Shown one piece after another: positions 5,733-33,476 of a stretch of 64,000 bases of DNA. How positions within the stretch are numbered: the stretch's first letter is position 1; the number at the start of each line of letters is the position of its first letter. The stretch comes from Iphione sp. A-MEVVRFRX5 (Eukaryota), in contig OZ320313.1 in the NCBI GenBank assembly GCA_976226885.1, forward strand, positions 157,604,001 through 157,668,000, in the 5' to 3' direction. The position numbers were made by a program, and so were the translations under genes. A model generated the notes under the pieces. That model was not told the DNA's origin. It saw only the letters and a program-made list of their open reading frames with translations, and did not search any database.

Positions 5733-6089
5733 GAGGGGGGTGATAGGGTGATGGGCAACGTAGAGTGGGAACAGTCATTAGAGGTACACCTTTACATATT
5801 AGTCCAGCTGCAAGCAGTCATACCTGTCACTCGTAGAGGACTTGGATATATGGACATAACGGCTATGTCTCGTCGCAGTCGAAAGATGGGAACCACTTAG
5901 TTAAACGAGTTTACGAAGTTTGACTACGGTTAATCTAGTGATAAAAGTGACGTCATATCAAGGGATGAGCTGTGCGCTATCTAGCCATTATTTGCCAATT
6001 CCTTGGTGCCGGGATACAGGACCGAGTGGGTCGGGAAAGGGAGCGAGTCCGAGTCCGTCAAGTGACGTCTTGGGAGCTGCCAGGGCGGG

Positions 6090-6196
6090 CCCTTGATATG
6101 ACGTCACTTTTATCACTAGATTAACCGTAGTCAAACTTCGTAAACTCGTTTAACTAAGTGGTTAATCACGTGATCAGTGACGTCATCCAAGGGATG
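6090..6196. repeat. Internal complementary region (ICR): reverse complement of the element's circle junction
   Basis: 6090-6163 = rc(5891-5964); 6162-6196 = rc(12320-12354); both perfect. Confidence 0.92.
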
Positions 6197-7577
6197 CTTT
6201 GTCTATTTCGCCTGTATCCCTGCACCACCTGGGTGATGACTGAGACCCCCAAGAACAGGGGGTGTGCCGTTATCACCCTGGTAATCCAACAGTGAATTTG
6301 CGGGAGACTGAGTCGTAGTAAGTTCAATAAAGGCATCAGCCCAGTTTTATTCCTGAATGCAAAACCATCAGCAATAAACAAATGCAACCACTACAACTTC
6401 CCTATCATGTAGGCGGGCCTATCAGTCTATGGGCCGTTCCAGGGTCTGCTGTCCCAATAAAGCCCCACATGGGCCCAAATTGAGAAAAATAATTGGTGTG
6501 TTGGTCTTTATTTCTGAATCAAAACCATTCCAATGGATGAGGGGGGCAGCAGTAATACGCAAAGAACCTGTTGAGCAGTGTAATTTGGAGGTGCTGACAC
6601 CCGTTAAGTGTACTGTGTACTCACTTCCTATGCACAGTTTGTGCTGTCTGTGCACTCTCTGGTGTCTTAGATGGGTGGCCGTCGGGCAAGGCCCCTTGTG
6701 GCCGGACTCGTCCGTGGCTGCGATGTGGGTTGCTAGGTGTTTGTAGCCCCCAAGCGGCTTGTCCTCAAGTGATTGGGGTGTCCGCATTAGATTGCCCGCC
6801 GTATCTCTTGGGAGTTGGGGGCGCTGGCAGGCCAGGCCGTGCCAGCATCCCGGTCGGAGTAGGGGTCAGCTCACTTCGTACCTACAAGGTCTGCACCCTC
6901 TGCCCCGGGCCGGGTAGCTCCGTCTTATGGTGGAGGCCCCCCTGTCAGGGGTGTGTGGGCACTACCCAAGCTGGCTAATCCGCTAGCGGCTGGGCTACTT
7001 CCCAGGCCTCCTTGCTACTCGCCTCAGCACAACTTGGCTCAGTGCGACCCATGGATGGGCCTTGTGGCGCGTGGTTGCATGGCGTAGGCACGGTCTTCCC
7101 TCAGTGGTAACGGTGCCGGCGCTGTTGCAGGGTACCACCTGAGTGGGGCTAAGCCCCCATCGCCACCAGTGTTTCTGGTTGGGCTCAGCCTGAAAAATGC
7201 ACACCCTCCTAGGGTGGGGGCCCGACATCCCTAATCAGCTGTTTTGAGCTACCTTACTGGGTGAGGCCATCCCATCTCCAGCAGCCCTACCGGCTATCTG
7301 TTCCCGCCCCCCCCTCTTTTCCCGGAGGGGTGTTGGCGTAATTGATCATGTGTCCCATTTCTTCATAGCTGTTGAAGGGCCTCGTCCGAGTGACACATCC
7401 CCAGCGCTTGGCTGGGGGCCCTTGGGTTCATGGCCAGTGTCGGGCCGGAATGGTGATTTTTTGGGTGGTGGTCCATCTAGTTAGACGAGTTTTAACGATG
7501 TTTGACTACTGGCCTTGCGTGTCTGCCCCAAGCCCAGGGCCGAATAGGTCCCCTGGTGGCAGTGCCTGAGCCAGCCC

Positions 7578-10500
7578 CAGCTCCGCAATAGAGATTCGTA
7601 GAACTGATGCGTCTTAGACATTGCGAAGCAGGCCGGGGGGTCTATGCCAGCCCAATGAGAAATTTTTAAAACGGGGACAAGACCAGTGTTTTGTGTCCCC
7701 TGGTGGTTCTGGGACATCCCAACTCACACCAGGTGTCCGTGAGGCCCAGAACTGGCAAGTTTTGTGATGATCCGCAGCCGTTGCACGAAAAAACCACCCA
7801 AATCTCCGCAACGAGAGCTCGTAGAGCGAAACTGATTTCACCGTCGCGTTGCGGGCCAGACGATCTATGCTGATCCACTGAAAGAATTAAGAGGCAGAAA
7901 CAGTGTTTTTACCCCTCCCCTGGTGGTTCTGGCACCCCCAAACTCGCCCCGGGCACCCGTAGGGCCCTCTGGGAAAGGGCTGGCAAGTTTAGTGGTGATC
8001 CAGGGACATTGTATGTCCGCACAAAACCACCCATATCTCCGCAATGGGGGTTCATAGGGCCAAACGGATTTCGCCGTCATGTTGCGGGTCGCGAGGTCTA
8101 TATAGGTTCGTTGAGAGAAATTAAGTGGGCAAAACTGTCGTTTTTGCCACCCCTGGTGGTCATGGCACCTCCGAACTTGCTCCGCACATGTACCAGGCCC
8201 CTGAGGGCAGGACTGGCAAGTTTGGTGGTGATATGGGAACCTTGCGGTTCTGCACAAAGCCACCCATTGCTCCGCAATGAGAGCTCGTAGAGCAAAACGG
8301 ATTTCATCCTCGTGTTGCGGGCCGAGTGATCTATATAGATCTGGTGAGAACTTTAAGTGGACAAAACCATTGTTTTTCCAACTCCTGGTGGTTGTGGCAC
8401 CTCCAAACTCGCTCTGGACGTCCCCAGAACCCCAAAGGGTAGGACTGGCAAGATTGGTGGTGATGCGGAGACTTTTCGGTTCCGCACAAAACCGCCTGTA
8501 GCTCTGCAACGAGAGCTTGTAGGGCAAAACGGATTTCCCTATCTTCTTGCGGGCCAAGAGATCTATATAGCTCCGATGAAAAAATTGAGTGGACAAAACC
8601 ATAGTTTTTGTCTCTCCAGGTGGTTGTGGCACCCCAAAACTTGCTCTGTACGCCCGTGGAGCCCCAGAGGGTAGGACTGGCGAGTTTGGTGGCGATCCGG
8701 GAACCTTGCGGTTCCGCACAGAACCACCGGTAGCTCCGCAAGGAGAGCTCGTAGAGCCAAACGGATTTCAGCATCTTGTTGCGGGCCAAGAGGTCTATAC
8801 CGATCCGATGAAAAATTTAAGTGGACAAAAACGTTGTTTTTGTCTCCCCTGGTGGTTGTAGCACCCCCAAACTCGCACCAGATGTCCCTGCGGCCCCAGA
8901 GGGTAGGACTGCCGAGTTTGGCGGTGATCCGAGAACCTTGCGGTTCCGCACAAAACCACCCATAACTCCGCAACTAGGGCTCGTAGAGCAAAACGGATTT
9001 CACCATAGTGTTGCGGGCCAAGAGGTCTATATAGATCCGGTGAAAGGATTAAGTGGACAAAAACGTCGTTTTTGTCTCTCCTGGTGGTTGTAGCACCCCC
9101 AAACTCGCTCCTGACGTCCGTGGGGCCCCCCAGGGTAGGACATGCGAGTTTGGTGGTGATCCGAGAACCTTGCGGTTCCGCACTAACCCACCGATAACTC
9201 CGCAACGAGGGCTCGTAGAGCAAAACGGATTTCATCATCAAGTTGCGGGCCAAGAAATCTATATAGATCCGATGAAAATTTGAAGTGGACAAAAACGTCA
9301 TTTTTGTCTCTCCTGGTGGATGTAGCACCCCTAAACCTCGCTCCAGACGTCTGTTGGTCCCCAGCGGGTAGGACTGGCGAGTTTGGTGGTGATCCGGGAA
9401 CCTTGCGGTTCCACCCAAAAACCACCGATAGCTCCGCAACAAAAGCTCGTAGAGCAAAATGGGTTGCACCATCGTGTTGCAGGCCAGGAGACCCATATAG
9501 GTCCGACGAGAGAATTAAGTGGACGAAAACATCGTTTTTGTCTCTCCTGGTGGCTGTGGCACCCCCAAACTCGCTCCGGGCGTCCGTTGGGCCCCAGAGG
9601 GTAGGACTAGCGAGTTTGGTGGTGATCCAGGAACCTTGCGGTTCCGCACAAAACCACCGATAGCTCCGCAACAAGAGCTCGTAGAGCAAAACGGATTTCA
9701 CCAACGTGTTGCGGGCCAGGGGATCTAGATAGATCCGATGAGAAAATTAAATGGGCAAAGACGTTGTTTTTGTCTATCCTGGTGGTTGTAGCACCCCCAA
9801 ACTCGCTCGGAACGTCCGTGGGGCCCCTGAGGGTAGGACTGGCGAGTTTGGTGGTAATCCGGGAACCTTGCGGTTCCGCACAAAACCACCCATAGTTCCG
9901 CAACGAAGGCTCGTAGAGCAAAACGGATTTCACCATCGTGTTGCGGGCCACGAGATCTATATAGATCTGACAAGATAATTAAGTGGACAAAAACGTCATT
10001 TTTGTCTCTCCTGGTGGTTGTAGCACCCCCCAAGCTCGCTCCTAGCATCCGTGGGGCCCCAGCGGGCAGGACTGGCAAGATTGGTGGTGATCAAGGAACC
10101 TTACGGTTCTGCACAAAACCACCGATAACTCCGCAACGATGGCTCGTAGAGCAAAACGGATTGCGCCATCGTGTTGCGGGCCAAGAGATCTATATAGGTC
10201 CGATGAGAAAAATAAATGGACAAAAACAAAGTTTTTGTCTATCCTGGTGGTTGTAGCACCCCCAAACTCGCTCCGAACGTCTGTGGAGCCCCAGAGGTAG
10301 GACTGGCAAGTTTGGTGGTGATCCGGGAACCTTGCGGTTCCGCACAAAACCACCTATAGCTCCGCAACGAAGGCTCATAGAGCAAAACGGATTTCACCAT
10401 CGTGTTGCAGGCCAGGGGATCTATATAGATCCAACGAGAAAGTTAAGTGGACAAAAACGTCCTTTTTTGTCTCTTCTGGCGGTTGTAGTACCCCCAAACT

Positions 10501-10890
10501 CGCTCCGGTTGTCCGTGGGGGCCCAGAGGGTAGGACTGGCGAGTCTGGTGGTGATACGGGAACCTTGCGGTTCCGCACAAAAAACCACCGATAGCTCCGC
10601 ACCGAGAGCTCGTAGAGCAAAACGGATTTCACCATCGTGTTGCGGGCCAACAGATCTATATAGGTCCGATGAGAACACTAAATGGACAAAAACGTTGTTT
10701 TTGTCTCTCCTGGTAGTTATGGCGCCTCCAAACTCGGTCCAAATGTCCGTAGAGCCCCTGAGGGTAGGACTGGTGAGTTTGGTGGCGATCCGACGATATT
10801 GCGGTACTGCACAAAACCACCAATAGCTCCGCAACGGAGGCTTGTAGAGCAAAACGGGTTGCACCATCGTGTTGCGGGCCAGGAGATCTG
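7578..10890. repeat. Tandem satellite array, ~232-bp unit, 14 full copies plus 1 partial
   Basis: Anchor ctccgcaa (or variant) at 7581, 7804, 8037, 8270, 8502, 8734, 8966, 9198, 9432, 9664, 9896, 10129, 10360, 10595, 10827; spacings 223-235 bp. Confidence 0.97.
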
Positions 10891-11736
10891 TAAGGATCGA
10901 CTCTTAGCTAAAAAACCCAGAGTCTGCCCAGTTTTTGTAGAAAACTTGTTTTGGAGATCTTGCTGAAGTCTGGATGCTTGAAGGCTTGAGAAGTCTGAAG
11001 GCAGCTGGAGTCTTGCGAAGTCTTGTTGGAGTCTTGAAAACGTCTTGTAGTCTTGGTGCTCAAGAACGGCTCTAACTCAAGAGCCGTTGTAGCTACGGAC
11101 CTGAAATTTGGTATGCATATACCCAAGGTCTAGACACAGGTGCCACAGAAGTTTGAACAATGTTGAACGACTTCGGGATATTTGTTGTCCGAGACACTGC
11201 GGAGTGCGTTTTCGCGCACCAGAAAAACCGCTATAAGTTCGGCAAAAATTGTTGCATTGCCTCGATTTTTAGTATGTACATAGCCCCGAGTACCGCGCAA
11301 GTGCTCTGCGAATTTTAGCCCAATCGGCCTACGGCGGGTCGAATGCGGGGTGGGAGAGTCCTAGCTCCTCGTTGATGCACCGGGGGCTTCTTTTTGCGCG
11401 AAAAACGCCGTTATTTCTGTTACATAAGCGGGAGTATCTCCCGAGTAACTGACTGCAGTGGCATTTACATCAGAGCAACGGCGACGCCGTAGTGACGCGG
11501 TGACGCGCGGGTGACCCAGATTTTCAAACTGACGTTGTGACCGTTACTGAACACTGTGGGCCAGCCAGGCAACCGTTGACCCAGTTTTGGGCGTCCTCGG
11601 ACCAACTTCGATTTTTGGTCTTTTTGGACTCAAGAATGCTCTTGGCCTCGAGGAATTACTTCTGTGATGCACAGTTACCTCCAGAGGACTTTTTCTCCCA
11701 GGATTTAGCCCATATGGGAACCTTTGAGGAGAGGTC

Positions 11737-12083
11737 AGGTGTGACTCCACCTGGCTCCGAGGATTTATACCTGGGGATTCAACAGGCTACCTCAAGGAGA
11801 CTTTCTCCAAGGATTTATACACACATTTCTGCATGTGACCTGAAGGAGACTTCTGGCAAGGCAAGGGACGTTACCAACGTGTAACCAGGCCAGGTGCACT
11901 CCTATGTGCAGTAAAACAGGTGTTACTCCACCTGGCTCCGAGGATTTATACCTTGGGATTCAACAGGATACCTCAAGGAGACTTTCTCCCAGGATTTATA
12001 CACACATTTCTGCATGTGACCTGAAGGAGACTTCTGACAAGGCAAGGGACGTTACCAACGTGTAACCAGGCCAGGTGCACTCC
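11737..12083. repeat. Two-copy tandem duplication, 181-bp period
   Basis: 11737-11902 and 11918-12083 are near identical (aggtgt[g/t]actccacctggctccgagg...ccaggtgcactcc). Confidence 0.95.
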
Positions 12084-13319
12084 AGTGCAGCCAAAGGTAA
12101 GTGATCTTGGCAAAAATCACCCTTTGACCAAAGAAGTTGCATACCAGGACTAAAGTCAGCCAGAAGGGGGGCCTCATTCAATCCTTGTACACAAAGGTTG
12201 TGCCTTCCCCCTACAACACTTGCTGTAGGGTGAAAACACGGCTAGGTTACTGGAGCATGCGTACGGTATGTCCGCACACTCCAAGCAACAAGCACAGAAT
12301 GGCTAGATAGCGCACAGCTCATCCCTTGGATGACGTCACTGATCACGTGATTAAACATAGCCTAAGCAGACTTTACATAGGGGACCTGTCAAATTAGAGC
12401 TATATTCCACAGAAACTGTTATACCTTTTTGGCTCAGCTCTTTTTATCGACCTGGTGGGTTTAGTGTGTGTGTTATTGCCCAATTTTCCTGACCAGCTGA
12501 CTGGTAATGTGGACACCAAAATAAGAGCAACCGAACTAACGTAAACCTGTTCGGAGGTGCAAAAGCCTGTCTAAATGGGACACAGATGCCCGAAAATACA
12601 GGTGGTAGCAGTAGAGAAGCAAACGAATAGTAATTTGTCTCTGGAAAAGGGGCAAGAATTGCCGAATTTTCCATCAGCGGCAAAAATGTAAAATAAGTTG
12701 TACGAATGGCAACATCTTTTAAAATATCAAAGGAAACATCTGTTATTAGAACCCGTATGGTGTGTATGGATCTCAGATAAACATATGTAAGAGGGTATAA
12801 ATAAAATACTTTAAGAGAACAGAGTAGCATTTAACAAAAACCTTCGAGGCCCAAATGCATACAATAGCGGTAAGAAAAGTGACGAGCAGCATCGAACAAC
12901 AAGGAAAAATCACTCCACAGAAAAAGTGACAATCAAAAATGAACTATAAATTACAAGAGCTTGGTCAGATATTGACTGCCGAGATGAAGTGTGTATACCT
13001 GCCACCAGGGGAGCATTCGTCACTTAACGTGTGCTCGTGGTACTGGCTGCGACTCAGAAGACTGATTGCTCATTTGCTCTTCACTGAAAGACCCCCCAGG
13101 AGTTTTTCATAGCGCTGTTTACAGAGAGCTTGTGGTGTATTCGTAAACCTAACCACCCACTGCGGACCGGCAGGGTGTACACAAAAGCTGTTACAGTACC
13201 GTAGTCTGTTACAGTTTTCGTTCCAATCTCATCGAAACCCATCGTGCAACAACCTACACGCACAGCCATCTCTGATGTGTATTTTACATGTATAAACATT
13301 GTGTTATATAGATGTACAA

Positions 13320-13385
13320 ATATATACCTATCTACCTATATAATATACCTACCTACCTACATACCTACATACATACATACATACA
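13320..13385. repeat. Imperfect (TACC/TACA)n tetranucleotide microsatellite
   Basis: tacctacctacctacatacctacatacatacatac run. Confidence 0.85.
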
Positions 13386-14659
13386 CTGATATTATTTCGT
13401 TTCACACTAACCAATTCCCAAAGTTTGTTCCCAACTAGTCCCATTAACTTTAAATTCTTGTCCAACAGATAAAAAGATGGCATATGGAGTGCATTCCGTA
13501 ACTGACCTTTTGAATGAATTTTAGTCCTATTCCATACATTCCTGTCCATACGGACAGTTCTGATTTGATATTTGACCCTGCATTTACTTAAAGGTGTAAT
13601 TCTAAAGGTGGTTTTGAAGAAGACCAGCCAAAAAGACGTACATTGGAAACGTGCTGTGTTCCTCCCTGTGATGGCCCTCGGTCAGATGAGAGTCGGCCAT
13701 TTTGGGGGTCAGAGAAGGTGTCACTGGTTTTGGTGGTTAATTTTCTCCTGTCATCTGGATTCTTGGCCCTTTTGTTGGTTCAATCTACTGCTACCTTCGC
13801 GCAGTTGGTTGCTACAGGTAGCAAGGGAGACATCCTGTAGAAATCACTTGTAGCCATTACAAAAGATTCAAAGAATATCATATAACTGCAGTTATTTGGC
13901 TTCCCACAAAATCTTTTTATATAATTTTCGATGATTTTTCTAGGACAAAGACCGATTGTGCTTTCCCACAACAGTGCTTTCCTGGTTTTAGAAGCAAATG
14001 ATAAACTGTACATTATAATGACTGGCAACTGGTAAGGGAAGTTGCATTTGATAGATGAAACAAACATGAGCCAAATCTAGGAAGGTTTTTTCCAGGTCTT
14101 GAGTTGAGTCATGTTAATTCACCTTTCATTTTAAAAGTACAGTAACTAGTGCAGAGAAAAAGCAGTCAAGGGTAATACACACTAACTTGTACTACATGTA
14201 AATGTACATGCAATTATGACAATGAACGTACAGACGTCACCTAAATGAATATGTCAGCTCTATGCTGTCCTGGAAACAACTTAACGTTTTCTAGGAAACT
14301 ACCCTGCTCAGGATAGAATCTCATAACTTTTTTATATTTATTTTTCTCTACGTAACAGCTTTCCATGACTTTTGTTGGCAACAAGATTGCATGACTTTTC
14401 CGTGACGTTCCATGAGGGCTTTCAGGGTTTTTCAAGACCGTGGGAACCCTTGACAAGTTTTTGTCAGTCTTCATCATTTTACAGATGACTAATGATAAAG
14501 TGAATGGGGTAATCGTTTACTATGATGCAGTATGGTTGACTGCTTTTTTTTATAATCTAAAGAACATTGTAATACAAACACAAGTAATGGGGCATTTTTA
14601 TGCAGGTGTATAACTAAGGCCACTACATTTGTACTTACTTCCTGGACCCACCAGTTTTA

Positions 14660-15231
14660 GGCCCGGTTTCCTTACATGCAGCAATGTCCGTCATCATTTC
14701 TGTGCAATGAATTATGTCATTATTGGTTTTTAGGCTATCACTGAGACAGTTTCAATACCTGCAGTGATGTGTATGTGTGTTCCTGTGCGTTGACGTGCAT
14801 TGTCTGTTTTCAGACCAGCACCGTAAATTTGCTGCAAATGCACTGCAAGGCACACCAATGCACTCATACTTCTTCATTTTTACTCACTTTTACTCACTTT
14901 GTAACATGATTTATGGACATGTCTGTACATGTCAGTCCTTTACCACACTTTTTCCCATCATTTTTGTCATTTTTCACAGCTTTTAGCATCATTTCTGTCC
15001 TTTTTCTTAATTTTCCTATCATTTTTACCATTTTTCACAGCTTTTAGCATCATTTCTGTCATTTTTCATCATTTTTCCCATCATTCATGCACAACAATGC
15101 ACACACATTAATGGACACCCCTGTGCATCACTGTGCAGTAAAAGTACAACACATACAAATGCACTGGAAACGCACACGGACGTCTCCCGCACTTGAACAC
15201 CGCATTTTGCCGGAGGTGTGGAAACCGGGGC
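14660..15231. mobile_element. PIF/Harbinger-type MITE (family A, older copy, opposite orientation to the 41.1-kb copy)
   Basis: TIR ggcccggtttcc / ggaaaccggggc (11/12), TTA on both flanks (14657-59, 15232-34), internal gacacccctgtgcat segment matching the other copies in reverse. Confidence 0.65.
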
Positions 15232-18200: not shown

Positions 18201-18617
18201 TCCTTCGGGAGGTTATTTTGGAATGTTAATTCCAATTTTTCAACTGGAATGCACGCAGCGGTGGCTGACGTTAGCCTAGATACAACAGAATCGACCCCTA
18301 AAGTGCCCTACCACACTGTACCACGGCCAAGTACTTCCACAAGGGCCTGAGCTACTTAGGGCTATTTTATGTTACAACAGAACTATACATCACCATGTGT
18401 GACCTGCCCAAAAAAACAACATGCGTTAACAATAACCTCGACGAACCCCTAAAGTCCATAGCCTGTGTGGACCATCGGGGGCTACAGGGGTGTATGGGTT
18501 TGGTTGGGTGCCCTTTGGCGCTCCCTTGACTCGCCCTCTGACAAACTCCCTGGGTGCCAGGCGCGCTGAAGAGCACCGAACCAGCAGGTTATTAGGATAA
18601 TCCTAAGCTGTACTCAC

Positions 18618-18820
18618 CCTCCTGAGGGCCTCCCACTGCCTCTGGCGGCTCGGATCATACGGCTCCAGTTAGTGATGGTTCTCTTTGGGGATCGCGGGCC
18701 ACCTCAGGGGGCAGGCGAGCAACTGGCGAGCTGCTCCTTGTAGGAAACACTAAAAGACCACAGGGTGCCGCCGCCGCTTGGCGGCGCGCAAGTGTACGTA
18801 TGTGTGGGATATGGCGCCGG
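18618..18820 (-). other. Candidate alternative first exon (CpG-rich, TATA-preceded)
   Basis: Minus-strand TATATAA at 18849-18843, CpG-rich body, donor AGG|GTGAGT at 18617. Start coordinate estimated from TATA spacing. Confidence 0.45.
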
Positions 18821-18976
18821 AGGTGTGAACGAGCGGCGGCTGTTATATATGTACAGGAGGGGTTGTCCAGCTGAATGTGCCAATGAGTGTGTGCGTGCAC
18901 GTGCCCTCTCCAGCTCGGACGTGTGCCAAGACGTCGTGACGGCGGCGGCGTTCCGGCGGACGAGCGGGTGGGGATG

Positions 18977-18981
18977 GTGTG

Positions 18982-19022
<41 letters not shown>
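18977..19022. repeat. (TG)n microsatellite
   Basis: Directly visible. Confidence 0.95.
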
Positions 19023-19024
<2 letters not shown>

Positions 19025-21680: not shown

Positions 21681-21705
21681 TCATAATGCTGAGTCAGCAT
21701 TATGA
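21681..21705. promoter_or_regulatory. Perfect T-MARE / ARE / AP-1 site (TGCTGAGTCAGCA) inside a 25-bp palindrome
   Basis: tcataatgctgagtcagcattatga is self-complementary about the central base. Its core 21687-21699 equals the Maf recognition element consensus, with AT-rich flanks. Confidence 0.55.
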
Positions 21706-24239: not shown

Positions 24240-24554
24240 GGCCTAAACAAAAAATACCTGTGTTTCTGGTAACCCGACCGACCCTATATTAGACTCTATT
24301 GTGCCTTTTTATTTTTTTCTTGTTTTTTGAATAACTTTGGCATGAATAATGATAGAGACATGTTCTACACACCAAATTGTTCCTTAGATTACCGGCTTTC
24401 ATTTGGCATAAGTATTAGTAACATAACCATACACATCTCTTGTTTCAGAATACTTTTAAATTGAAAAAAAAGAAAAATAAAAAAAATGTCACCTACCGAC
24501 CGACCCTGTATTTTTTCACCTTGTTACAGGAAACACAGAACTTTTTTTTAGGCC
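24240..24554. mobile_element. PIF/Harbinger-type MITE (family B, ~315 bp)
   Basis: Imperfect ~33-bp TIRs starting GGCCTAAA, TAA on both flanks (24237-39, 24555-57), internal direct repeat ccgaccgaccct at 24274 and 24496. Confidence 0.75.
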
Positions 24555-24783
24555 TAAGGATGACTAAGCTGACGTAATTTCTGACCGTCTGGGTTTATGC
24601 CCAAGTACCGTATATTATTATATGGTTATGCCAATTGTGGGGGGTTGTAGTGTATGAACATGATGGGTCCATACAGAGGTCTGTATGGACCCGTCACGGC
24701 TGTACGGACCCCAACGTTTGTGGTGCCCCCTAGCATATATTTGTGGAACTGCACAGTCGATCAGCTGGCTGCAGAGTAACACC

Positions 24784-26882
24784 ATGGCCGAGAGAGATAT
24801 TGAACACCTGAATCAATCATTATCGGAATCTATGCAACCTGGATCACCCGAAGTAGTAATGTTGGAGCCGGCAGAAGGAACATGCAGTGAACCGGTGGAT
24901 GTACCAGCCCCGAAGAGACCCAAAAAAGTGCATTTTAACCCTCTTGTCGAAGTAGAGTATGAGGTAGATGATGAAGACGACCTAGATGATTTCGAGGATG
25001 GTGCAGCCGAATTGCAGACGTTCATTGAAAAAAGTAGGAACCCGCAGACAGTAAAGAAGACAGAACGTGACATTTGGAAGTTGAATGAATTTCTACGGTC
25101 AGTAAATGAACCACGCAACCCTGAGCAGATTCCACCGAAAGATTTAGACATCTTGATGGGGCGTTTCTTCCTACAGATGAAGAAAGCAGACGGCTCACAA
25201 TATGAGCCATCTACACTCACTGCAGTCTATGGAAGTTTCAAGAGATATCTCGAAGAAAAGAAGTATGGAAAATGCATAATGACGGATCCCGCGTTTGCCA
25301 CTTCAAGAAAAGTCATAGACAGCCGAAAGAAACAACTGAAAGCAGAGGGTCTTGGAAGCAAGCCGAACAAAGTGAGTGATTGTTGTAAAAGTAGTGTACG
25401 TACGGCGATTATTAACCCTTGTTCACTGTGAAAACAATATAAAACCCATTGATTTAACCCAGAGAAGGAATATACGAGTATTGTAGCAGCAAACATCCAA
25501 AAGTCACACATCTTCATTCATTTGTTTACATTTGCTGCAAGCAGACGACGCAGGCAGTGTAACGGCACAAAATAATTAACCGGAATGGCATGATTTTTTT
25601 ACTGAAATTAAAATCCTACAAATCATGAACTGTAGTAGTAAAAGTATTTTTTTTTCTATTTGTACAGTCTGACCCAGTAACACCAGAAGAAGAAGAGCAG
25701 CTGTGGAGTCAAAAGATCATGACAGATGACACCCCAAAGGGCCTCCGTAACGCACTCTGGTTCATCTTGACGAAATGCCTTGGTTTTAGGGGCCGTCAAG
25801 AAAGCAGGCAACTGAAATGGGGCGACCTAGTCTGCAAGAAAGATTCTTCTGGAGAAGACTACATAGAATTCCATGAAAGGGTTACCAAGACCCGCCAGGG
25901 AGATGGAAATCACCAACGCCCATTTAATCCCAAGTTATGGCGCAATACAGCACATCCAGAAAGATGCCCGATACACCTATTGAAGGAATACGAGAAGCGT
26001 AGGCCAGCAACAGAGTTGCATACCGACTCACCATTTTTCTTGGGCATAAATTATAAGCGAAAGCCTGAAGCAGAAGTTTGGTTTTCTCGGCAGCCAATGG
26101 GGGCGAATGAGCTAGGCCGCATAATGCGAACCATGGCAGAAGACGGCGGACTCCAAGGAAAAAAAACCAATCATTCGGTCCGTAAAACGGCTTGTACTGC
26201 ACTGCTACACGCCAATGTTGACCCCGTTGTCATCGCCCAACTGTCAGGCCACAAATCCACATCTAGCCTCGCGCATTACTCTGTAGCCAGTTACGAACAA
26301 CAGAAAAATATGTATAAGATCCTAGCTGAGAACACATCTGCAGGTGCACTCGTGCCAGTACAGAAGGACCCCCCTGAGGTAAAGTAGTATTATGATTATT
26401 TTCCATTTCAGCTTCCATTCCTGTAACAAAAGAGGCATTTTGCGCATTCCATTATATGACACAATTAACTAACCAATTTCACATACTTACAGCCACAGCC
26501 CGGTCCATCAGCGGTGGTAGCTGAACTCCCATCCATACCAGAGGCAGCGGCCCCTGTGCCACAAGTCCCAAATTTCGATCTTGGACTAAACTTTGAAGAC
26601 GATGATGACACCATTCCCGCATCTCAGACAGAGACGGTATGTTAGTCACAAATCATGAAACTGATATAGTTTTTCCTGTAATCAACAGCAAATTCCTTCC
26701 AGAGCATCCCAGGTCCGTACACCAGTGCTATACGGGCACATGTTTTCTTTCAGGTGGAGATGGCGATGACAACTCCTGATAAAACATCCAAAGCTATGCG
26801 GATCCAGAAAAGACTTCTCGACGGTTTACTGGCTGGCAACAAGATTGAGAACAGCACGATCAATATCAACATAAACCTGTAA
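24784..26882 (+). CDS. Crypton-A tyrosine recombinase (DUF3504-type; family related to KCTD1/ZMYM/QRICH1), 523 aa; exons 24784-25371, 25668-26378, 26493-26636, 26754-26882
   Basis: ACCATGG start; three GT-AG phase-0 introns that keep the frame open to TAA at 26880-82; catalytic set R (GFRGRQE), K (TKTRQG), HxxR (NHSVR), H (SGHKS), Y (LAHY); Crypton-typical C-terminal NSTININL. Confidence 0.92.
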
Positions 26883-27271
26883 ATTTAATCCAAATTTGGC
26901 CAAAAAGTTATTTGGCGCCTTCCTACGCAGTTGAAAACTGGACGTGTAGTTGTGCAGCCCCGTAACGGGCCAACAAAAAGTTGAAATATATATTTCTATC
27001 AATTGAATTAGTCAAAATAAATTTTTGTGTTTTTCATTATATGAATAAATCATCTTTCTATAACTGTTGCAAAGCATGTTTGTTACTTTTATCATAATTT
27101 GCTATAAAAATAATGAAATGTCAGAAAAAAGTTCACACGAGATTTCAACGAGAAGTCCGTACGCGCAAAAAACAAAACAACAAGATGGCGACCAAAACAT
27201 CTACTCAGTGAGTTCTTTTCTCTCTATATTTTCCTTCAAGAAGCTCCAAAAATCAATTGGCATGACCATAT

Positions 27272-27431
27272 AATAAAAAGAATACGTAGATATAGTGCTG
27301 ATACAACCGGCCGATCTCGCTCAGTCTGGGTAGCTACGCAGACCTCGCCCTGCGGGCTTGGTCTGCTTCGCTACCCAGACTGAGCTCGCCCGGCCGGTTG
27401 TATCAGCACCATATCTACGTATTCTCTTATT
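27272..27431. repeat. Long nested hairpin at the 3' end of Crypton 1
   Basis: Arms gaatacgtagatat(a/g)gtgctgatacaaccggccg / rc, gctcagtctgggtagc / rc, gcagacc / ggtctgc; apex gccc-TGC-gggc (27351-53). Confidence 0.95.
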
Positions 27432-27707
27432 CCTTTAACCTGAGAGCCAAGTACAGTGGAATCTCTATTTCTGACCAGAGGTCGGGTCTGGGCTCAAATG
27501 GTCACAATCGCAAGTTTGGTTTCAAATTGAGTGGATAGGGGGTCAGGGCTGAAAACAATATTCCTTTCTCCGTCTCTCTCTATTGACACATACAAGTAAA
27601 AAAGTACTGAATTTGACAAGTAAGAGTCCAAAAGGTTCTGTATTAGATGATTAAGAGTCTTAAAAGTGCAGCATTTGACAAGTAAGAGTCAAAAAAGGGG
27701 TGATTTT

Positions 27708-28720
27708 CAGGTGTGAGAGACATCACAGAGGTCGCCATTGAGAACCCCGGTCTTTCTCAACAGCCTCTGCAGGCTGTGAGTGACATCAGAGAGGTTGCCG
27801 TTGACGCCCTAAGTCTCTCCCAACCAGCCCCTCCAGGGTGTGAGGTACATCAGAGAATTTGCTGTTAAGGGTCGGTTTCCTTACATGCATTGAGATGCCT
27901 TCACCCGCATTTTTTGTCCACATTAGTATATATGCGTTTTATATGCATTTTCCAATCATGCACCTCCACGCACAGGGGTGTCTGTTGATGTGCATTGTGA
28001 ACTGTGTGTTTGTGTCCGTGAATGATGACCAAAATGGACGAATATGACATAAAAACCACAAAAATGACTACTGACTGCGTCTATGATCCATGAAACCTAT
28101 GATAGATCTTTGATAGATGTAGGAAAAAATGGCAAATGTCATGGAGAGAATGCCAAAAAAACGGCTATTTCATGGAGATTGTGCCAGATTCCATGGAGAA
28201 AGGGCCCCAAAATGGCAAATTTCATGGAGAAAGTGTTGAAAAATGGCTTTTGCATGGAGATTGTGGGAAATTCCATACAGGGAGCAAGTGTGAACAAATG
28301 TGCAGTGATCATGTTTTCTCACCCTTTTTTTCCTGTTTCAAAGACTATCTTCTGTATACCACTGCCCGTTTTCCGTCTGCTTGCATTAAATTATTGGTCA
28401 GGGACCATGAATGAACAACGGATGCCAAATGGATGTCAACCGATGTCAACGCACACGGACACAATTGGCACCCTCTATTAGAATCAACATGACCAATAAA
28501 AATGGACCCGAACAGAGCAAAAATGTACCCAAAACACATAGACACCAATGCATGTAAGGAAACCGACCCTAACTCCCCCAGTCTCCCCCAACCACTCTTT
28601 CAATCATTAACCCAGGTGTGAGGTACATCAGAGAGGTTGTTGTTGACAGCCATGGTCTCTCCCGACCAGCCCTTCCAGGGTGTGAGCGACATCCGAGAGG
28701 TCACCATTGACCCCCCCCCC
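27708..28720. repeat. ~63-bp minisatellite (about 5 units) interrupted by a MITE
   Basis: Recurrent cagg(g)tgtgag..acatc.gagagg at ~27708, 27770, 27835, 28614, 28676. Confidence 0.8.
27869..28569. mobile_element. PIF/Harbinger-type MITE (family A, 701 bp)
   Basis: Perfect 24-bp TIRs gggtcggtttccttacatgcattg; TAA target-site duplication (27866-68, 28570-72). Confidence 0.9.
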
Positions 28721-31344
28721 CTCCGGTCTGCTCTGGCAACTCATTCATCAATTATCCCCGGTGACAGGTCACAAATTGATAGTAAAATGTACCATCATTG
28801 AACCTTTATCAATTAGTCAGACCCTGAAATTGGTTGGCAATTGTTTTGGTTGGAAATCGATGATTGAACAAACTGGTTATGTGTAGAGAAAATTTCCATT
28901 CCAATCTCAATTGGTTGCAATAGCCCATTTGGTAGGAAATTGCAGAGGTTGGTAATCGAGACTCCACTGTACTTTAATTGTATCATTATACTTCACTCTT
29001 AGGCACTACCCAGCCACTTTAATCTAGGTTGTTTTAATTATCAGTTTTCCTGCCTTTTATATTAATTAGCTTAGTTTTACAATGTCACTACATGTATTTA
29101 CTATGTCAAGCAGCTTAACCCTTCTATGCTTTGGTGTTTCTTATTGACTTCCAAATGATCAACTTGTATGCTCTCTGCTACAAAGCCTATTTCTCTTGAC
29201 TGGATTACTATGTAGACATTTTTAACCGTATCTATCATGGGCTGTCTATAGCAGTGACAGCCATAACTAGAATAAGACAGTCTAGATGGAAGGTTCGGGA
29301 CCATGTTATAGTAACTTCAGGTGCTGATGGAGGTATAATTAATCAAGAAGTCAATTAATCAAGAAGGCACCCAGCGCATGTATATACTATGAAATGGACG
29401 TACCTCAATTAAGAAACGGCTGAGATTAATTCCCTTGAATATGTTCTTGAATTCATCTTTGATGATATTTCTCCATTGAGCATTATTTCTATGTATGGCA
29501 GATATGTTTTGCCTTGTACTCTCTCTTATCAAAAGGGAGACTACAGTGAACACAACAGATAACAAGACACAACTTTGTTAGTGACAGTAGAATGCCTCTT
29601 TGCGACCGTACTAACTTGCAACCAACATGTTAAATACTGTTAAGCATTGTATCAATAAACCATGCAATTTGCGACCAAATCAATTCGCAACCAAACCTCC
29701 CTGCAACCACATGTATTGGGGACATTTTCACAGTATTTCAATACTACAGTGAAACCAGAGGTGTCACTACGACCACCCCTCCTTAACAGAACGGAACGTT
29801 TGAAGGGTTATTCACTGTCTAAGGTGTGGGCAGAGGTGTTGGCACAACCACTCTTCCCTAACAGAGCGGGTGACAGAGAATATTCAGAGGCAGGAAATGC
29901 CCGAGCTTGTGCCTAACAGCTGCAGGGGGCTTGATCACCAATAACTTTGAAAGGTATCCATGTCAGAAACTCTATTCCTTCCTATACATGTATGCATACA
30001 ATATATTCCAGTGTATGCAGAATGGCTTTCAAGTGATTCTGTTTTATGTCCTTAGGGCCAGTTTCCAGATTTGCAGTCATACACTCCATTTGCATTGCAT
30101 TTACTTTGACTTTTGAATAGTATTTCATGATCAATGGAGGTATTTCAATATCTGAATTGCATTATTGTGTTTTGGTTTGCATTAAGTTTTCAGTTTACAA
30201 ATATGGACATTACTCAGGAATTTCACACAAACGCATGCAAAACACATAAGTAGGGAAATCACATTACAACCAGATTATTTCAGGTGTGTCTGTGTATAGA
30301 CATAAGGCACTATCACATATGACCGCACTATTTCATACTTTTCATGAATTAATTCCCCTTTTGTGTATTTTTAATGAGTTATTTAGCCTGTGTGGTTGAT
30401 AACACTACATTTATACAGAACACCTTCAACAAACCCCTTTCATGCAAGTCACACAAGCAAACACAATCAAAAAGACATCCCATTGCATTCCTATGCATCG
30501 TTATGGTCGATAATACCATAGCGCAGTGCAAATGCAGTGCACAGATGCAAGTATGGAAACAATCCCTTAGATGTGTTTTCATGTACACATATTTATGATT
30601 TTGAATACATAGCTATGATTTGTGGGAAAAACCAGATACGCAGTATACTATGTCCCTACCCATGTGCCCAGACATATTACATACAGATGCATGAGTGGGG
30701 TGCTGATGGCCAACAACCAATTTTTGGAGCTATGGTTCATATTCATGAACGTTTGGGAGTTAGTCCATTCTGTTGAATACCTGGAAAGACCGTCACACAG
30801 CCTTGTATGGCTGGATACTAAAATACAAAATGGTCATGCAACTGAAAGCCTGAATACGTACATAATGCCATGAAAAACCTCCCTTACATCTGTTTAAATG
30901 TTTCAGCTGATGTTATCCTGCTCTTTATGTTGTTACAGTGATACCGTAATATCCTTGTTGTGTGCCAAACTCAACTCTTAAAAATCTAGACAGCCTTGCT
31001 AAAATATGTCGCCTAGCAAGACTGAAGCTCTTGTGGTTGGCCAGCATTCACATATCTGGCGTCCATTGAGAGTTGCTAATATTCAATACGAACTTTTAAA
31101 AACATCTGCCATATATTTATTCTAAGGGAATGTAAGTTTTCCGTTCTAATGCGATTTAGGATGTTTGTTATATTAAATATAGAGACTAAATACACGTTTT
31201 TAAACGTCAGACTAATCACGGCAATAATTATATTCAACTTTTTGAGAGGATGACGGGGATTGGCAGTTGATACGAAACCGGAACTAGTTCCATAGCAACC
31301 ATTTGGGCGGGCAAATTGATTTGGAATTCACGTCGAGTGAGAAG

Positions 31345-32986
31345 ATGGATCTCCCCAAAAGAGGCGAAATCTGCCATTTAAACGGACGAAATGTAAAAGT
31401 AAAAGAAATCTATCGGCCAGCGGGTTTCGATATGGATGTATGCAACGTGCAGGACGTCCTAACGGGACATAAGAACTCCGTACGATGCGATGAACTAGAG
31501 CGGGAGGCGGTGCCGACTTTCGAGATCGGCCTGGACTTGCTTGCGGTAGAAGATATGGAATTGGAGGAGAATTTGGAAAATGTTGAGAAAAAACCCAAAG
31601 GGGCTGGCAGTGGTAGATTTTATATGCCCGCCGAGGAGGAGGTGAACGCTCTGAAACAGGAGGTCAACCGCAAGGGAACAGTCGACCAGACGAAGTGGGC
31701 TGTCAAAATCCTACGAGGTGCGTATTATTCACATATGTCTTAAGCTGTAGTGAAGTGGGCGGGGCACCCTGAAATAACATGTATTAATTTTTAATACGAT
31801 TATTTTTACAGACTGGCTGACGGATGTGGGCCTGCCGCTGGAGTTCGAGGAATTGGCAGATGGTGAACTCGCTGGGATATTGGAGCGCTTCTACACGGGG
31901 GTACGGAAGAAGGACCTGGAGATGTACTCCAAGTCTGCGTTCAAGAATATACGCTGTGGGATCCAGCGTCATCTGGTTGGGCCCCCATTTTGCAGGAATA
32001 TTAACATTATGAAGGACAGCGCATTCAGACAGGCGAACCTGGCCTATGACGGGTATATGGCCCGCATACGCTCCAGCGGGAACGACAAAACATGCCACAA
32101 ACCTGTCATAGAGCCAGAGGATGTTTCACTGCTCTATGAGAGGCTTTTCAACGACACGCCGACTGGACTACAGAGGAAAGTGTTTTTCGAGCTGTTGTTC
32201 CACTTTGGACGGAGGGGCCGGGAAGGTTTGCGGTACCTGAAGCGGGACTCGTTTAAAATTGAAAAAGATGCAGCGGGTCTGGAATATGTCACCATGAGCT
32301 ACAATGAGGCTGAGAAAACCAGATCGGGCCTCAAAAAAGACGAAGATGACGTAGAAAAGACAATGTATGCACTACCTGAGGAGCCGGGGCGATGTCCGGT
32401 AGCGAGCTTCAGGAAGTATGTGGGGCTACTGAACCCGGCCTGTCCGGCGTTTTTCCAGAGGCCCAAAAAGTTCATCGACTCCAACATGAAGTGTTGGTAC
32501 GATAATAGTCCGGTGGGAATCAACACCTTGTTCAATATGATGGCGACCATGAGCAAGGAGGCGGGCCTGTCGAAGAAATACACCAACCACAGCATAAGGC
32601 GGACATGCGTGACGACCTTGGAGCGTGCAGGATTCTCCGTAGAAAAAATCCAGACGGTAACGGGCCACAAGAGTGCGGCCTCGCTAAAGCACTACTTAGG
32701 AGGACCAAGCAAAATGGTCAAAAAGACCATGTCGAATGCGTTGTCAGTGTATGGAGCCGCAAGTAAGAGTGCAACAGCTGATCGGGAGAATCTGGGTCAG
32801 CCGCAAGTAAAGATGGAGACGGCAGGAGCGTCCGGCGGTGGGGGCGATTCGGATATGGACTTCCCGTTGACCCAGACGGTGCATAAGGTCCATAATACGA
32901 TGAAGAACGAAGAAATCCTGCATACGCTTTTCTCTGGGGCCCCGACTCTGCATAACTGCACTTTCAACATCACGTACAACAAGTAG
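31345..32986 (+). CDS. Crypton-A tyrosine recombinase (KCTD1-like DUF3504 family), 515 aa; exons 31345-31717 and 31812-32986
   Basis: aagATGG start; a phase-1 GT-AG intron (31718-31811) fuses the two track ORFs in frame (KILR-D-WLTDVG); catalytic R (FGRRGRE), K (EAEKT), HxxR (NHSIR), H (TGHKS), Y (LKHY); C-terminal LHNCTFNITY motif. Confidence 0.92.
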
Positions 32987-33352
32987 ACATTACGCTTTGG
33001 AGCGTACCGGCGCTGCGTGTTTACTTTTTTTGAACAAGCCGGAAGTGGTCTGAGTTCACGCGAGAGCGACGATAACTGTTTTTTTCTGTTTGGATTTTTA
33101 AAAATGTTTCGCATTTTGGGCAGAAAACGGACTAAAAATCTTCTATCTTTCTTCTTATTACACTTTGATGTGTCTGTGTTGGTTTGAGGTTAATGTGGAG
33201 TGCGCGCCAATAGGATGAGCGGATACATAATCTGAGAAAAATAAACATCCAAGATGGCGTCCCCGGGTATGGAAATCAGTGTGTCGCTTTGTTCTTTTAT
33301 CTTACATGATATTTCATATTAATTTTTGGGTGGAAATAGCATTAGAACCGAA

Positions 33353-33476
33353 TTTAATGACTCCATTTCGTTTCTGGTGGGCAGTTTAAACACTCAATTC
33401 CTCGGGGTTGGACTGCGTCCAACCCCTCGGTTTCGTGTCTAAACTGCCACACCAGAAACTCAATTCCTTCGTTAAA
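33353..33476. repeat. Nested hairpin at the 3' end of Crypton 2
   Basis: tttctggtg.ggcagtttaaacac / gtgtctaaactgcc.caccagaaa; apex ggggttggac-TGC-gtccaacccc (loop 33414-16). Confidence 0.92.

What the first reader, a model, noticed from the sequence alone, without database searches (positions are those of the whole stretch)
5891..33476. One topology for three YR-type elements: 5'-a ... a'-b-loop-b'-3'
Seen, read on each element's sense strand. DIRS-like element: a=35 bp, b=74 bp, loop 125 bp. Crypton 1: a~23 bp, hairpin 160 bp. Crypton 2: a~17 bp, hairpin ~124 bp. All place the inverted junction copy just upstream of the 3' end. Inference: Crypton ends and the DIRS ICR may be homologous or mechanistically equivalent. 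That would suggest Cryptons pass through a single-stranded circle, possibly from RNA with RT supplied in trans, or that the 6.4-kb element is moved by a Crypton-type YR. Three such elements within 28 kb also hints at a YR insertion hotspot. Speculative.
Basis: inference. Interest (0 to 1): 0.75.

Follow-up and report, generated by a model that had tools for sequence, protein, structure and literature searches.

The report
Junction-copy ends in Cryptons and DIRS
Two Crypton jumping genes and one DIRS-type retroelement in this stretch each carry, just inside the 3' end, a reverse-complement copy of the sequence made by joining their two ends; this is textbook for DIRS but a conserved and apparently undescribed end signal for animal Cryptons.

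Summary
In all three elements a segment just inside the 3' end is the reverse complement of the 3'-end/5'-end junction. Joined in silico, each gives one long hairpin.

- **The 6.46-kb element (5891-12354, minus strand)** is a non-coding derivative of a genuine DIRS1-like retrotransposon. An autonomous copy elsewhere in the genome (RT/RNase H plus recombinase) has the same ends. A Crypton recombinase is not needed to move it.
- **The two Cryptons** (24615-27435 and 31143-33483, the second re-bounded from 19 copies) keep the layout across diverged family copies. Base-pair covariation is strong: 26 of 66 hairpin pairs are compensated, against about 9 in shuffles.
- **Other animals share it.** Palindromes with a common CTCG-stem-triloop-stem-CTCG apex lie downstream of Crypton genes in a hemichordate, an echinoderm, two bivalves and two unnamed assemblies. 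The full layout is seen in three of these.
- **An RNA route is disfavoured.** The intron is retained, mismatches between the 5' end and its internal copy are fixed, and wobble pairs are rare.
- **A "hotspot" has no support.**

Homology with the DIRS ICR is unproven. The literature I could reach says animal Cryptons lack terminal repeats. Other follow-ups in this scan reported the same Crypton layout on other pieces of this genome.

The parts
5891..12354 (-). Non-autonomous DIRS1-like retrotransposon. Its sense strand is the window's minus strand. There is no RT or recombinase ORF.
   Evidence: The family has at least 35 copies at 89-99% identity, with ends at 5891 and 12354-12357. It shares its first 812 nt and last 549 nt with the autonomous DIRS in L056. 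Its ORFs have no Pfam hits.
5891..5964 (-). b': the 3'-terminal arm of the DIRS, i.e. the outer part of the 3' ITR.
   Evidence: 100% complementary to 6090-6163. It shows 0-2 differences across 16 copies, while the loop shows up to 13.
5959..6006 (-). Inner part of the 3' ITR. It lies inside the 125-nt loop.
   Evidence: 48 nt, 88% complementary to 12281-12328.
6090..6196 (-). DIRS internal complementary region (ICR). b (6090-6163) pairs with the 3' end. a' (6159-6196) pairs with the 5' end.
   Evidence: Joining the ends in silico gives a continuous duplex of about 107 nt per arm.
6692..6775 (-). Remnant of the C-terminus of the DIRS recombinase.
   Evidence: tblastn with the L056 recombinase: 28 aa, 50% identity, E = 4e-4.
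7689..10882 (.). 232-bp tandem array of about 14 units, carried as cargo of the non-autonomous DIRS.
   Evidence: Families D1-D7. The spacing between the conserved flanks is the same in another copy on C10.
12281..12357 (-). DIRS 5' ITR. The outer part, a (12320-12357), pairs with the ICR. The inner part (12281-12328) pairs with the 3' ITR.
24615..27435 (+). Crypton 1, an autonomous DUF3504-type Crypton.
   Evidence: Family copies at 67-75% nucleotide identity begin at 24615 and end at 27429-27435. Pfam finds DUF3504 and Phage_integrase.
24615..24637 (+). Crypton 1 a: the 5'-terminal 23 nt.
   Evidence: 96% complementary to 27254-27276. It is conserved in 10 copies. Complementarity reaches 32-33 nt, with lineage-specific covarying sequence, in L006, L007 and L012.
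24685..26387 (+). Crypton 1 recombinase gene. Exon 1 is 24685-25371, a phase-0 GT-AG intron is 25372-25667, and exon 2 is 25668-26387.
   Evidence: ORFs. tblastn and the splice-site sequence are. The similarity gap is kept in all family copies.
27254..27276 (+). Crypton 1 a': an inverted copy of the 5' end that abuts the hairpin.
   Evidence: Short derivatives of about 600 bp keep the 3' block starting at 27256.
27276..27428 (+). Crypton 1 3' palindrome. The apex, CTCG-CCC-TGC-GGG-CTTG, is at 27344-27360.
   Evidence: DNA fold z = -18.4. 26 of 66 pairs are compensated, against 8.9 +/- 2.1 in shuffles.
27429..27433 (+). Semi-conserved ANTAC tail or target. Together with the preceding TT it forms an imperfect 7-nt direct repeat of the 5' TTATTAT.
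   Evidence: A at +1 and T at +3 in 11 of 11 copies.
31143..33483 (+). Crypton 2, an autonomous DUF3504-type Crypton of 2341 bp.
   Evidence: The ends come from 19 copies at 82-98% identity, with no target-site duplication.
31143..31157 (+). Crypton 2 a: the 5'-terminal 15 nt.
   Evidence: Complementary to 33334-33348 with one mismatch, which is fixed in all copies.
31826..32986 (+). Crypton 2 recombinase ORF (386 aa). An upstream ORF at 31303-31743 is of unknown role.
   Evidence: It is 33% identical to the Crypton 1 recombinase.
33334..33348 (+). Crypton 2 a'.
33353..33476 (+). Crypton 2 3' palindrome. The apex is CTCGG-stem-TGC-stem-CTCGG.
   Evidence: DNA fold z = -7.5. Five pairs are compensated within a young family.
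33477..33483 (+). Crypton 2 unpaired 3' tail, CCCGACG.
   Evidence: Present in the intact copies, with one substitution in L038. It forms a bulge at the in-silico junction.

Best explanation
The stretch holds one non-autonomous DIRS1-like retrotransposon and two autonomous Cryptons of the DUF3504 type. Each carries, next to its 3' end, an internal segment (a'-b) that is the reverse complement of the sequence formed when the 3' end (b') is joined to the 5' end (a).

In the DIRS this segment is the classical ICR of an element with ITRs. The element is mobilised in trans by an autonomous RT-plus-recombinase DIRS that has the same ends.

In the Cryptons it is a conserved cis-acting end signal. Once the ends are joined, the junction and its internal twin form one palindrome with arms of 85-100 nt. 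The crossover site lies in one arm, marked by a short unpaired tail and by one-sided YTCG motifs.

I infer that the Crypton recombinase works on this region in a base-paired, folded state. That state could be a hairpin on a single strand or a cruciform in the circle. In it, the internal copy acts as a splint that lines up the two ends for strand exchange.

**Shown:** the anatomy, family conservation, covariation, cross-species recurrence, intron retention and the DIRS partner.

**Inferred:** that folding is used by the recombinase, and the splint role.
For: - **Anatomy:**
- **Family-defined ends:**
- **Continuous hairpin after joining the ends in silico**, in Crypton 1, Crypton 2, the DIRS, Ptychodera and Diadema.
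- **Covariation in the Crypton 1 hairpin:** 26 of 66 pairs have both sides changed, against 8.9 +/- 2.1 in shuffles and 2-5 in slid controls; 96.9% of cells are paired.
- **Covariation in the a/a' extension** in L006, L007 and L012.
- **Crypton 2:** five compensated pairs in a young family.
- **Conserved one-sided mismatch blocks and apex motif**, always in the same orientation relative to the gene.
- **Short derivatives** of about 600-770 bp keep only about 60 nt of the 5' end plus a 3' block that starts at a'.
- **Other species:**
  - Ptychodera L057: 44-nt a/a' abutting a 142-nt palindrome.
  - Diadema L060: 61-nt a/a' abutting a 177-nt palindrome.
  - ENA locus L064: a 19/19 a' abutting a 171-nt palindrome.
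- **DIRS partner:**
- **Published context:**
  - PMC9977147 reports that active Cryptons both excise and rise in copy number.
  - PMC9345347 describes bacterial recombinase elements that circularise one strand, and cites the integron and CTX-phage work as recombination on single-stranded substrates.
Against: - No circle, single strand or junction read was observed. No sequencing run was listed for this genome.
- Covariation could also come from arm-to-arm gene conversion, or from a cruciform in a purely double-stranded circle. A single-stranded stage is therefore not required.
- Two of eight loci from other species show no palindrome (L061, L062). Three more have a palindrome without a clear a/a' (L058, L059, L063). 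Ends in those species rest on single copies.
- One Crypton 2 deletion copy keeps only the last 92 nt.
- The DIRS and Crypton recombinases show no pairwise similarity, so the shared design may be convergent.
Confidence: 0.6

Rival explanations
1. Purely double-stranded recombination-site design. The circle carries two inverted copies of the attachment site as protein-binding sites. This would resemble the inverted FRT sites of the yeast 2-micron plasmid (my own knowledge, not checked here). No intrastrand pairing is ever used. Arm similarity is kept by gene conversion between close inverted repeats.
For: Canonical recombinases of this class act on duplex DNA. Crypton 1 has an imperfect 7-nt direct repeat at its ends, TTATTAT and TT+ANTAC. 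The 3' flank of Crypton 2 has the consensus WCTA. Both fit the Goodwin microhomology model, which PMC9977147 supports for CryptonF.
Against: Position-by-position compensation runs along the 75-nt arms, including positions that are otherwise free to vary. The same arms also hold conserved mismatch blocks that gene conversion should erase. a' abuts b with 0-4 nt between them in the two window families and the three other-species loci with a full layout, which separate protein-binding sites would not require.
Confidence: 0.25
2. The RNA route proposed by the first reader. Cryptons are copied through an RNA by an RT supplied in trans. The a'-b segment serves, as in DIRS, to regenerate the ends of the cDNA.
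For: The layout is formally identical to the DIRS ICR. Autonomous DIRS elements with RT exist in the same genome. Only 70 nt lie between the Crypton 1 5' end and its ATG.
Against: Family copies keep a gap of about 280-320 nt where the window copy has its GT-AG intron. A fixed a/a' mismatch is present in the Crypton 2 copies, and position 13 is persistently mismatched in Crypton 1 lineages, so a is not templated from a' at each cycle. Only 3 wobble-type changes occur against 44 double changes. The DIRS arms, by contrast, are perfect.
Confidence: 0.04
3. The palindrome is not part of transposition. It would be a transcript-level or host-level signal, such as a 3'-end processing signal, a small-RNA source or a replication origin. 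The a/a' match would then be incidental.
For: The palindrome lies in the 3' untranslated part of the element, downstream of the recombinase ORF.
Against: a is exactly the first nucleotides of the family-defined element, and a' abuts the palindrome. Non-coding short derivatives keep just these parts. Wobble pairs are scarce, which argues against an RNA stem.
Confidence: 0.08

Closest known systems
DIRS1-like retrotransposons (ITR plus ICR), as summarised in PMC8969392
   Same: The window element 5891-12354 has ITRs. Its ICR lies just upstream of the 3' ITR. [quoted passage not shown] No target-site duplication is visible. The autonomous partner encodes RT/RNase H and a tyrosine recombinase.
   Different: The window copy is non-coding and carries a 3.2-kb satellite array of 232-bp units in place of the ORFs. 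Its ITRs are short (48 nt), while the outer arm b/b' is long (74 nt) and perfect.
Cryptons (Goodwin et al. 2003; the CryptonA/DUF3504 group of Kojima & Jurka 2011, PMC3212892)
   Same: A single recombinase gene with DUF3504 and Phage_integrase domains. There is no RT, no true terminal inverted repeat and no target-site duplication. A short imperfect direct repeat sits at the ends of Crypton 1. Introns are present.
   Different: PMC3212892 states that no terminal repeats were found in animal Cryptons, and PMC8969392 names a short direct repeat at the termini as the only distinguishing end feature of Cryptons. Here a conserved 3' palindrome of 120-180 nt, plus an inverted copy of the 5' end, defines the ends in two families of this genome. 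It is also seen in hemichordate and echinoderm loci.
Tyrosine recombinases acting on single-stranded substrates: integron cassette insertion and CTX-phage integration (cited in PMC9345347), and strand-biased circularising elements (PMC9345347)
   Same: A tyrosine recombinase is paired with an imperfect palindrome. The Crypton palindromes carry conserved unpaired bases on one side and an unpaired stretch at the crossover. There is no target duplication and little target homology. That attC and the CTX site work this way, as folded imperfect hairpins, is my own knowledge and was not checked here.
   Different: Those systems are bacterial, and the comparison is by analogy only. No single-stranded Crypton form has been seen. 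In the Cryptons the crossover lies 75-100 nt from the centre of the palindrome, not at it.
Split direct repeats of Ngaro, PAT and VIPER elements (A1 ... B1-A2-B2; PMC13465315, PMC8969392)
   Same: These elements also hold an internal copy of the junction of their two ends, next to the 3' end.
   Different: The copy is in direct orientation there, not inverted, and the elements are RT-dependent. None was examined here.

Membership tests
DIRS1-like retrotransposon (for 5891-12354) | Inverted terminal repeats | tested here: met
   5959-6006 against 12281-12328: 48 nt, 88% complementary. The same is seen in the autonomous copy L056.
DIRS1-like retrotransposon (for 5891-12354) | ICR near the 3' end that is complementary to the outer ends of both ITRs | tested here: met
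   6090-6163 pairs with 5891-5964 at 100%. 6159-6196 pairs with 12320-12357 at 97%. The in-silico junction folds as one duplex.
DIRS1-like retrotransposon (for 5891-12354) | Encodes RT/RNase H and a tyrosine recombinase | tested here: not met
   The window copy has no such ORF and keeps only a 28-aa recombinase remnant. The feature is met in the autonomous relative L056, which has RVT_1, RT_RNaseH and Phage_integrase. The window copy is therefore a non-autonomous derivative.
DIRS1-like retrotransposon (for 5891-12354) | No target-site duplication | tested here: met
   The flanks at 5880-5890 and 12358-12368 share no repeat. Only a 2-nt TT/AA overlap is implied by the ICR.
DIRS1-like retrotransposon (for 5891-12354) | Methyltransferase domain downstream of RT/RNase H | tested here: inconclusive
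   Pfam gave no methyltransferase hit in the 771-aa ORF of L056. No more sensitive search was run.
Crypton, DUF3504 type (for 24615-27435 and 31143-33483) | Tyrosine recombinase as the only enzyme, with a DUF3504 domain | tested here: met
   DUF3504: E = 4e-19 and 1e-10. Phage_integrase: E = 1.5e-10 and 5.6e-10. Neither element holds any other ORF of 180 aa or more.
Crypton, DUF3504 type (for 24615-27435 and 31143-33483) | No terminal inverted repeats, no long direct repeats and no target-site duplication | tested here: met
   Ends and flanks of 19 and 11 copies were compared. The inverted repeat that is present is subterminal at the 3' side, so it is not a terminal inverted repeat.
Crypton, DUF3504 type (for 24615-27435 and 31143-33483) | Short direct repeat or microhomology at the two termini | tested here: inconclusive
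   Crypton 1 has TTATTAT at the 5' end and TT+ANTAC at the 3' end, matching at 5-7 of 7 positions in 11 copies. Crypton 2 has only a WCTA preference in the 3' flank, resembling nt 3-6 of its 5' end.
Crypton, DUF3504 type (for 24615-27435 and 31143-33483) | Moves as an excised circle by site-specific recombination | not testable with these tools
   No sequencing run was listed, so no junction reads could be sought.
Folded single-strand recombinase substrate (attC / CTX type); considered only as 'works like' | Imperfect palindrome with conserved one-sided unpaired bases | tested here: met
   Conserved mismatch blocks and the CTCG...CTCG apex keep a fixed orientation.
Folded single-strand recombinase substrate (attC / CTX type); considered only as 'works like' | Only one strand is recombined and replication resolves the product | not testable with these tools
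   This needs strand-specific detection of intermediates.

The most novel reading that the evidence does not exclude
Animal Cryptons transpose through a folded single strand. The internal a'-b segment splints the two ends so that one strand exchange releases or inserts a single-stranded circle. That would make them a eukaryotic counterpart of integron cassettes, CTX phage and strand-biased circularising elements. It would also explain why Cryptons can both excise and multiply. The DIRS ICR would then be this same device, inherited when a Crypton-like element acquired an RT.
Probability: 0.2. Interest if true: 0.85.

Novelty: new variant of a known kind. Interest (0 to 1): 0.65.

Why it matters
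Cryptons are the least understood class of eukaryotic DNA transposon. The literature available here says animal Cryptons have no terminal repeats and can be recognised only by their gene.

A conserved, covarying end signal changes three things:
- It gives annotators a way to find Crypton ends and non-autonomous Cryptons.
- It gives experimenters a defined minimal substrate: about 60 nt of the 5' end plus about 180 nt of the 3' end.
- It makes the question of a double-stranded or single-stranded intermediate directly testable.

It also puts Cryptons and the tyrosine-recombinase retroelements (DIRS, and by extension the split-repeat Ngaro and PAT types) on one structural footing. All of them keep an internal copy of their own circle junction next to the 3' end.

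Tried and rejected
- **Junction reads.** I looked for sequencing runs to search for circle-junction reads, but none was listed.
- **More Crypton families from this genome.** I tried to fetch 20 more (59-79% protein identity to Crypton 2).
- **Other species.** Four of twelve look-ups returned no DNA at all.
- **Crypton recombinase moving the 6.4-kb element.** Rejected after finding the autonomous DIRS with the same ends.
- **Templated re-copying of a from a', or of one arm from the other.** Rejected for the Cryptons because mismatches are fixed.
- **Flipping of the palindrome by recombination between the twin sites.** Rejected as a regular event, because the asymmetric blocks have one orientation in all intact copies. 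One rearranged copy, L029, does show an inverted core.
- **Classical core site.** I compared the b' end with a, looking for inverted binding arms around the tail. None was convincing.
- **Hotspot.** There are no cross-family neighbours in the flanks. A rough calculation of mine, at the upper-bound element density, gives about one or two such 28-kb triplets per genome by chance.
- **Spliced protein.** The joined Crypton 1 protein was not built or searched. The exons were searched separately by reference.
Full report
**Setting**

The window is eukaryotic DNA, from G000:C1 at about 157.6 Mb of a 1.18-Gb assembly. The closest relatives of its Crypton recombinase are in marine invertebrates: Ptychodera, Mercenaria, Pinctada, Diadema and Actinostola.

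**1. The DIRS-like element**

*Anatomy.* repeat finder and the sequence show the following on the window's plus strand:
- b at 5891-5964;
- a 125-nt loop whose first part (5959-6006) is 88% complementary to 12281-12328;
- b' at 6090-6163, 100% complementary to b;
- 6159-6196, which is 97% complementary to 12320-12357.

Read on the minus (sense) strand, this is a 5' ITR, an interior, an ICR and a 3' ITR. The 5' half of the ICR pairs with the start of the 5' ITR. [quoted passage not shown] That is the textbook DIRS1 layout as described in PMC8969392.

*Family.* At least 35 copies, 89-99% identical, end at 5891 and at 12354-12357.

*Coding capacity.* The interior has no RT or recombinase. It holds a 232-bp tandem array (7689-10882), and its ORFs have no Pfam hits.

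*Autonomous relative.* A copy on C19 (L056) has the same end architecture: 74-nt perfect arms, the ICR and the ITR. It has three overlapping ORFs:
- a 450-aa ORF with no Pfam hit;
- a 771-aa ORF with RVT_1 and RNase H;
- a 379-aa ORF with Phage_integrase.

The window copy shares its first 812 nt (98%) and last 549 nt (90%) with this element. It also keeps a 28-aa remnant of the recombinase.

*Conclusion.* The 6.46-kb element is a non-autonomous DIRS1-like retrotransposon. No Crypton enzyme is needed to move it. Its arms b and b' are almost invariant and perfectly paired in 16 copies, while the loop differs at up to 13 positions.

**2. The two Cryptons**

*Proteins.* Both encode DUF3504 plus Phage_integrase proteins. 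The two are 33% identical to each other. Neither shows BLASTP similarity to the DIRS recombinase.

*Crypton 1.* Family copies are only 67-75% identical in DNA, but 77-85% identical in recombinase protein for the intact copies.
- All copies begin at window 24615 and end at 27429-27435.
- a (24615-24637) and a' (27254-27276) are 96% complementary.
- a' runs straight into a 153-nt palindrome (27276-27428).

Nineteen copies define 31143-33483, a 2341-bp element with no target-site duplication.
- a is the first 15 nt and a' is 33334-33348.
- Four nt follow a', then the palindrome at 33353-33476, then a conserved unpaired tail, CCCGACG.

*Joining the ends.* Joining the 3' end to the 5' end in silico produces one continuous hairpin in both Cryptons and in the DIRS. 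Arms are about 100 nt (Crypton 1), about 85 nt (Crypton 2) and about 107 nt (DIRS).

**3. Is it selected?**

*Covariation in Crypton 1.* In eight diverged hairpins, 26 of 66 pairs show changes on both sides that keep the pair.
- Shuffles give 8.9 +/- 2.1, and slid controls give 2-5.
- 96.9% of cells are paired.
- In three lineages (L006, L007, L012) the a/a' complementarity extends to 32-33 nt, with lineage-specific sequences that covary.

*Covariation in Crypton 2.* This young family already shows five compensated pairs.

*Conserved asymmetry.* Some mismatches are conserved and one-sided:
- blocks such as GATCTCGC opposite GCTCGCCC in Crypton 1;
- three direct copies of an ACTCAATTCCTYCG-like motif in Crypton 2;
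- an apex of the form CTCG-[GC stem]-triloop-[stem]-CTCG.

In every intact copy these have one orientation relative to the gene.

*Fixed a/a' mismatches.* The a/a' duplex has a fixed mismatch in the Crypton 2 copies. In Crypton 1, position 13 is mismatched in most lineages. The arms are therefore not simply re-copied from one another at each cycle. Pairing is maintained while specific asymmetries are protected.

*Short derivatives.* Elements of about 600-770 bp keep only about 60 nt of the 5' end and a 3' block that starts at a' (coordinates). This points to these parts as the cis-requirements for movement.

**4. Generality**

Eight loci from other organisms could be read.

*Full layout in three:*
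- Ptychodera flava (L057): a at 3646-3689 and a' at 6867-6910, abutting a palindrome at 6909-7050.
- Diadema antillarum (L060): a at 2041-2101 and a' at 5606-5666, abutting a palindrome at 5657-5829.
- An unnamed ENA assembly (L064): a 19/19 a' abutting a palindrome at 5392-5561.

*Palindrome but a different or unresolved 5' partner in three:*
- Mercenaria (L058);
- Pinctada (L059);
- L063, where the apex is in reverse orientation.

*No palindrome in two:* Actinostola (L061) and L062.

All six palindromes share the CTCG...CTCG-type apex seen in both window Cryptons, in reverse orientation in L063. Ends in these species rest on single copies.

**5. RNA or DNA?**

- Crypton 1 has a canonical phase-0 GT-AG intron at 25372-25667.
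- In the family copies, similarity stops at the donor and resumes at the acceptor, with a gap of 280-320 nt. New copies are therefore not made from spliced RNA.
- The fixed a/a' mismatches and the scarcity of wobble-type changes (3, against 44 double changes) point the same way.
- Together these make the "RT in trans" route unlikely.
- A single-stranded DNA stage remains open.

Two published observations bear on a DNA-level route. Active Cryptons both excise and gain copies (PMC9977147). Bacterial recombinase elements are known that circularise a single strand (PMC9345347).

A cruciform in a double-stranded circle would explain the covariation equally well, because a and a' become contiguous with the palindrome once the ends are joined.

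**6. Ends and targets**

- Crypton 1 shows an imperfect 7-nt direct repeat: TTATTAT at the 5' end and TT+ANTAC at the 3' end.
- Crypton 2 shows a WCTA preference just after its tail, with C at +2 in 14 of 17 copies.
- Both are compatible with the microhomology model established for other Cryptons (PMC9977147).

**7. Hotspot**

- Cryptons are very abundant here. There were 2012 first-look candidates, and all 107 that were scored had at least 59% identity.
- None of 52 loci from the three families has a member of another family within its 1.5-kb flanks.
- A rough calculation of mine, at the upper-bound density, predicts about one or two such 28-kb triplets per genome by chance.
- Same-type Cryptons do sometimes sit about 2 kb apart. 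The Ptychodera copy also has a second same-type palindrome just upstream. Self-association of Cryptons is therefore a lead, but a general recombinase hotspot is not shown.

**8. Literature**

- PMC3212892 states that no terminal repeats were found in animal Cryptons.
- PMC8969392 and PMC13465315 repeat that only short direct repeats mark Crypton ends.
- I found no paper in the held library that links Cryptons to an ICR-like structure or a hairpin end.
- Other follow-ups of this scan reported the same layout on other pieces of this genome.

**Limits**

- No intermediates were observed.
- Only two families in this genome could be studied in depth.
- The spliced Crypton 1 protein was not assembled or searched. 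Its exons were handled separately.

Noticed in passing
window 27868-28570: A 703-bp MITE-like unit with perfect 25-nt terminal inverted repeats lies just downstream of Crypton 1. A related terminal sequence also occurs at 14657-14680 (I7 and I12).
   Followed up: no
window 11736-12083; L056:1341-1688: A 167-nt direct repeat (97% identical, spaced 181 nt) sits in the 5' region of the DIRS. It is present in both the non-autonomous and the autonomous copy.
   Followed up: partly
G000:C22:6708361-6708978; G000:C1:86397442-86398060; G000:C13:20085553-20086318: Short (about 620-770 bp) presumptive non-autonomous derivatives of the Crypton 1 family. They keep only about 60 nt of the 5' end and about 175-185 nt of the 3' end, starting at a' (coordinates; the sequence was not fetched).
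   Followed up: partly
G000:C10:29689979-29693369; G000:C15:20415662-20418848; G000:C2:76562352-76565572; G000:C4:113580487-113584044: Pairs of Crypton recombinase genes lie about 2 kb apart. Three pairs are inverted and one is tandem. This suggests dimers, or insertion of one Crypton beside another.
   Followed up: no
L029 (G000:C2:11397678-11402958), 3' end of the element: In this Crypton 2 copy the central ~42 nt of the palindrome is inverted relative to the arms, and the right arm is lost. This is a rearrangement at the palindrome.
   Followed up: partly
L057:3289-3414 (Ptychodera flava): A second palindrome with the same CTCGG...CCTCG apex lies about 230 nt upstream of the 5' end of the Ptychodera Crypton. 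It may be the 3' end of a neighbouring element in tandem.
   Followed up: partly
L058:3203-3317 and 5727-5906 (Mercenaria mercenaria): Here the segment upstream of the gene is an inverted copy (87%, 115 nt) of the 3' arm of the palindrome, not of the segment before it. This end design is closer to a long terminal inverted repeat plus an internal copy.
   Followed up: partly
L043:4418-4813: A diverged DIRS recombinase fragment (58% identity over 132 aa) and an extra inverted hairpin copy lie next to one non-autonomous DIRS copy.
   Followed up: no
L008/L009 and L013/L014 (C22:53.04 Mb and C17:27.50 Mb): Two Crypton 1-family copies have identical end sequences in different flanks on two chromosomes. 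This suggests very recent transposition of that lineage.
   Followed up: no
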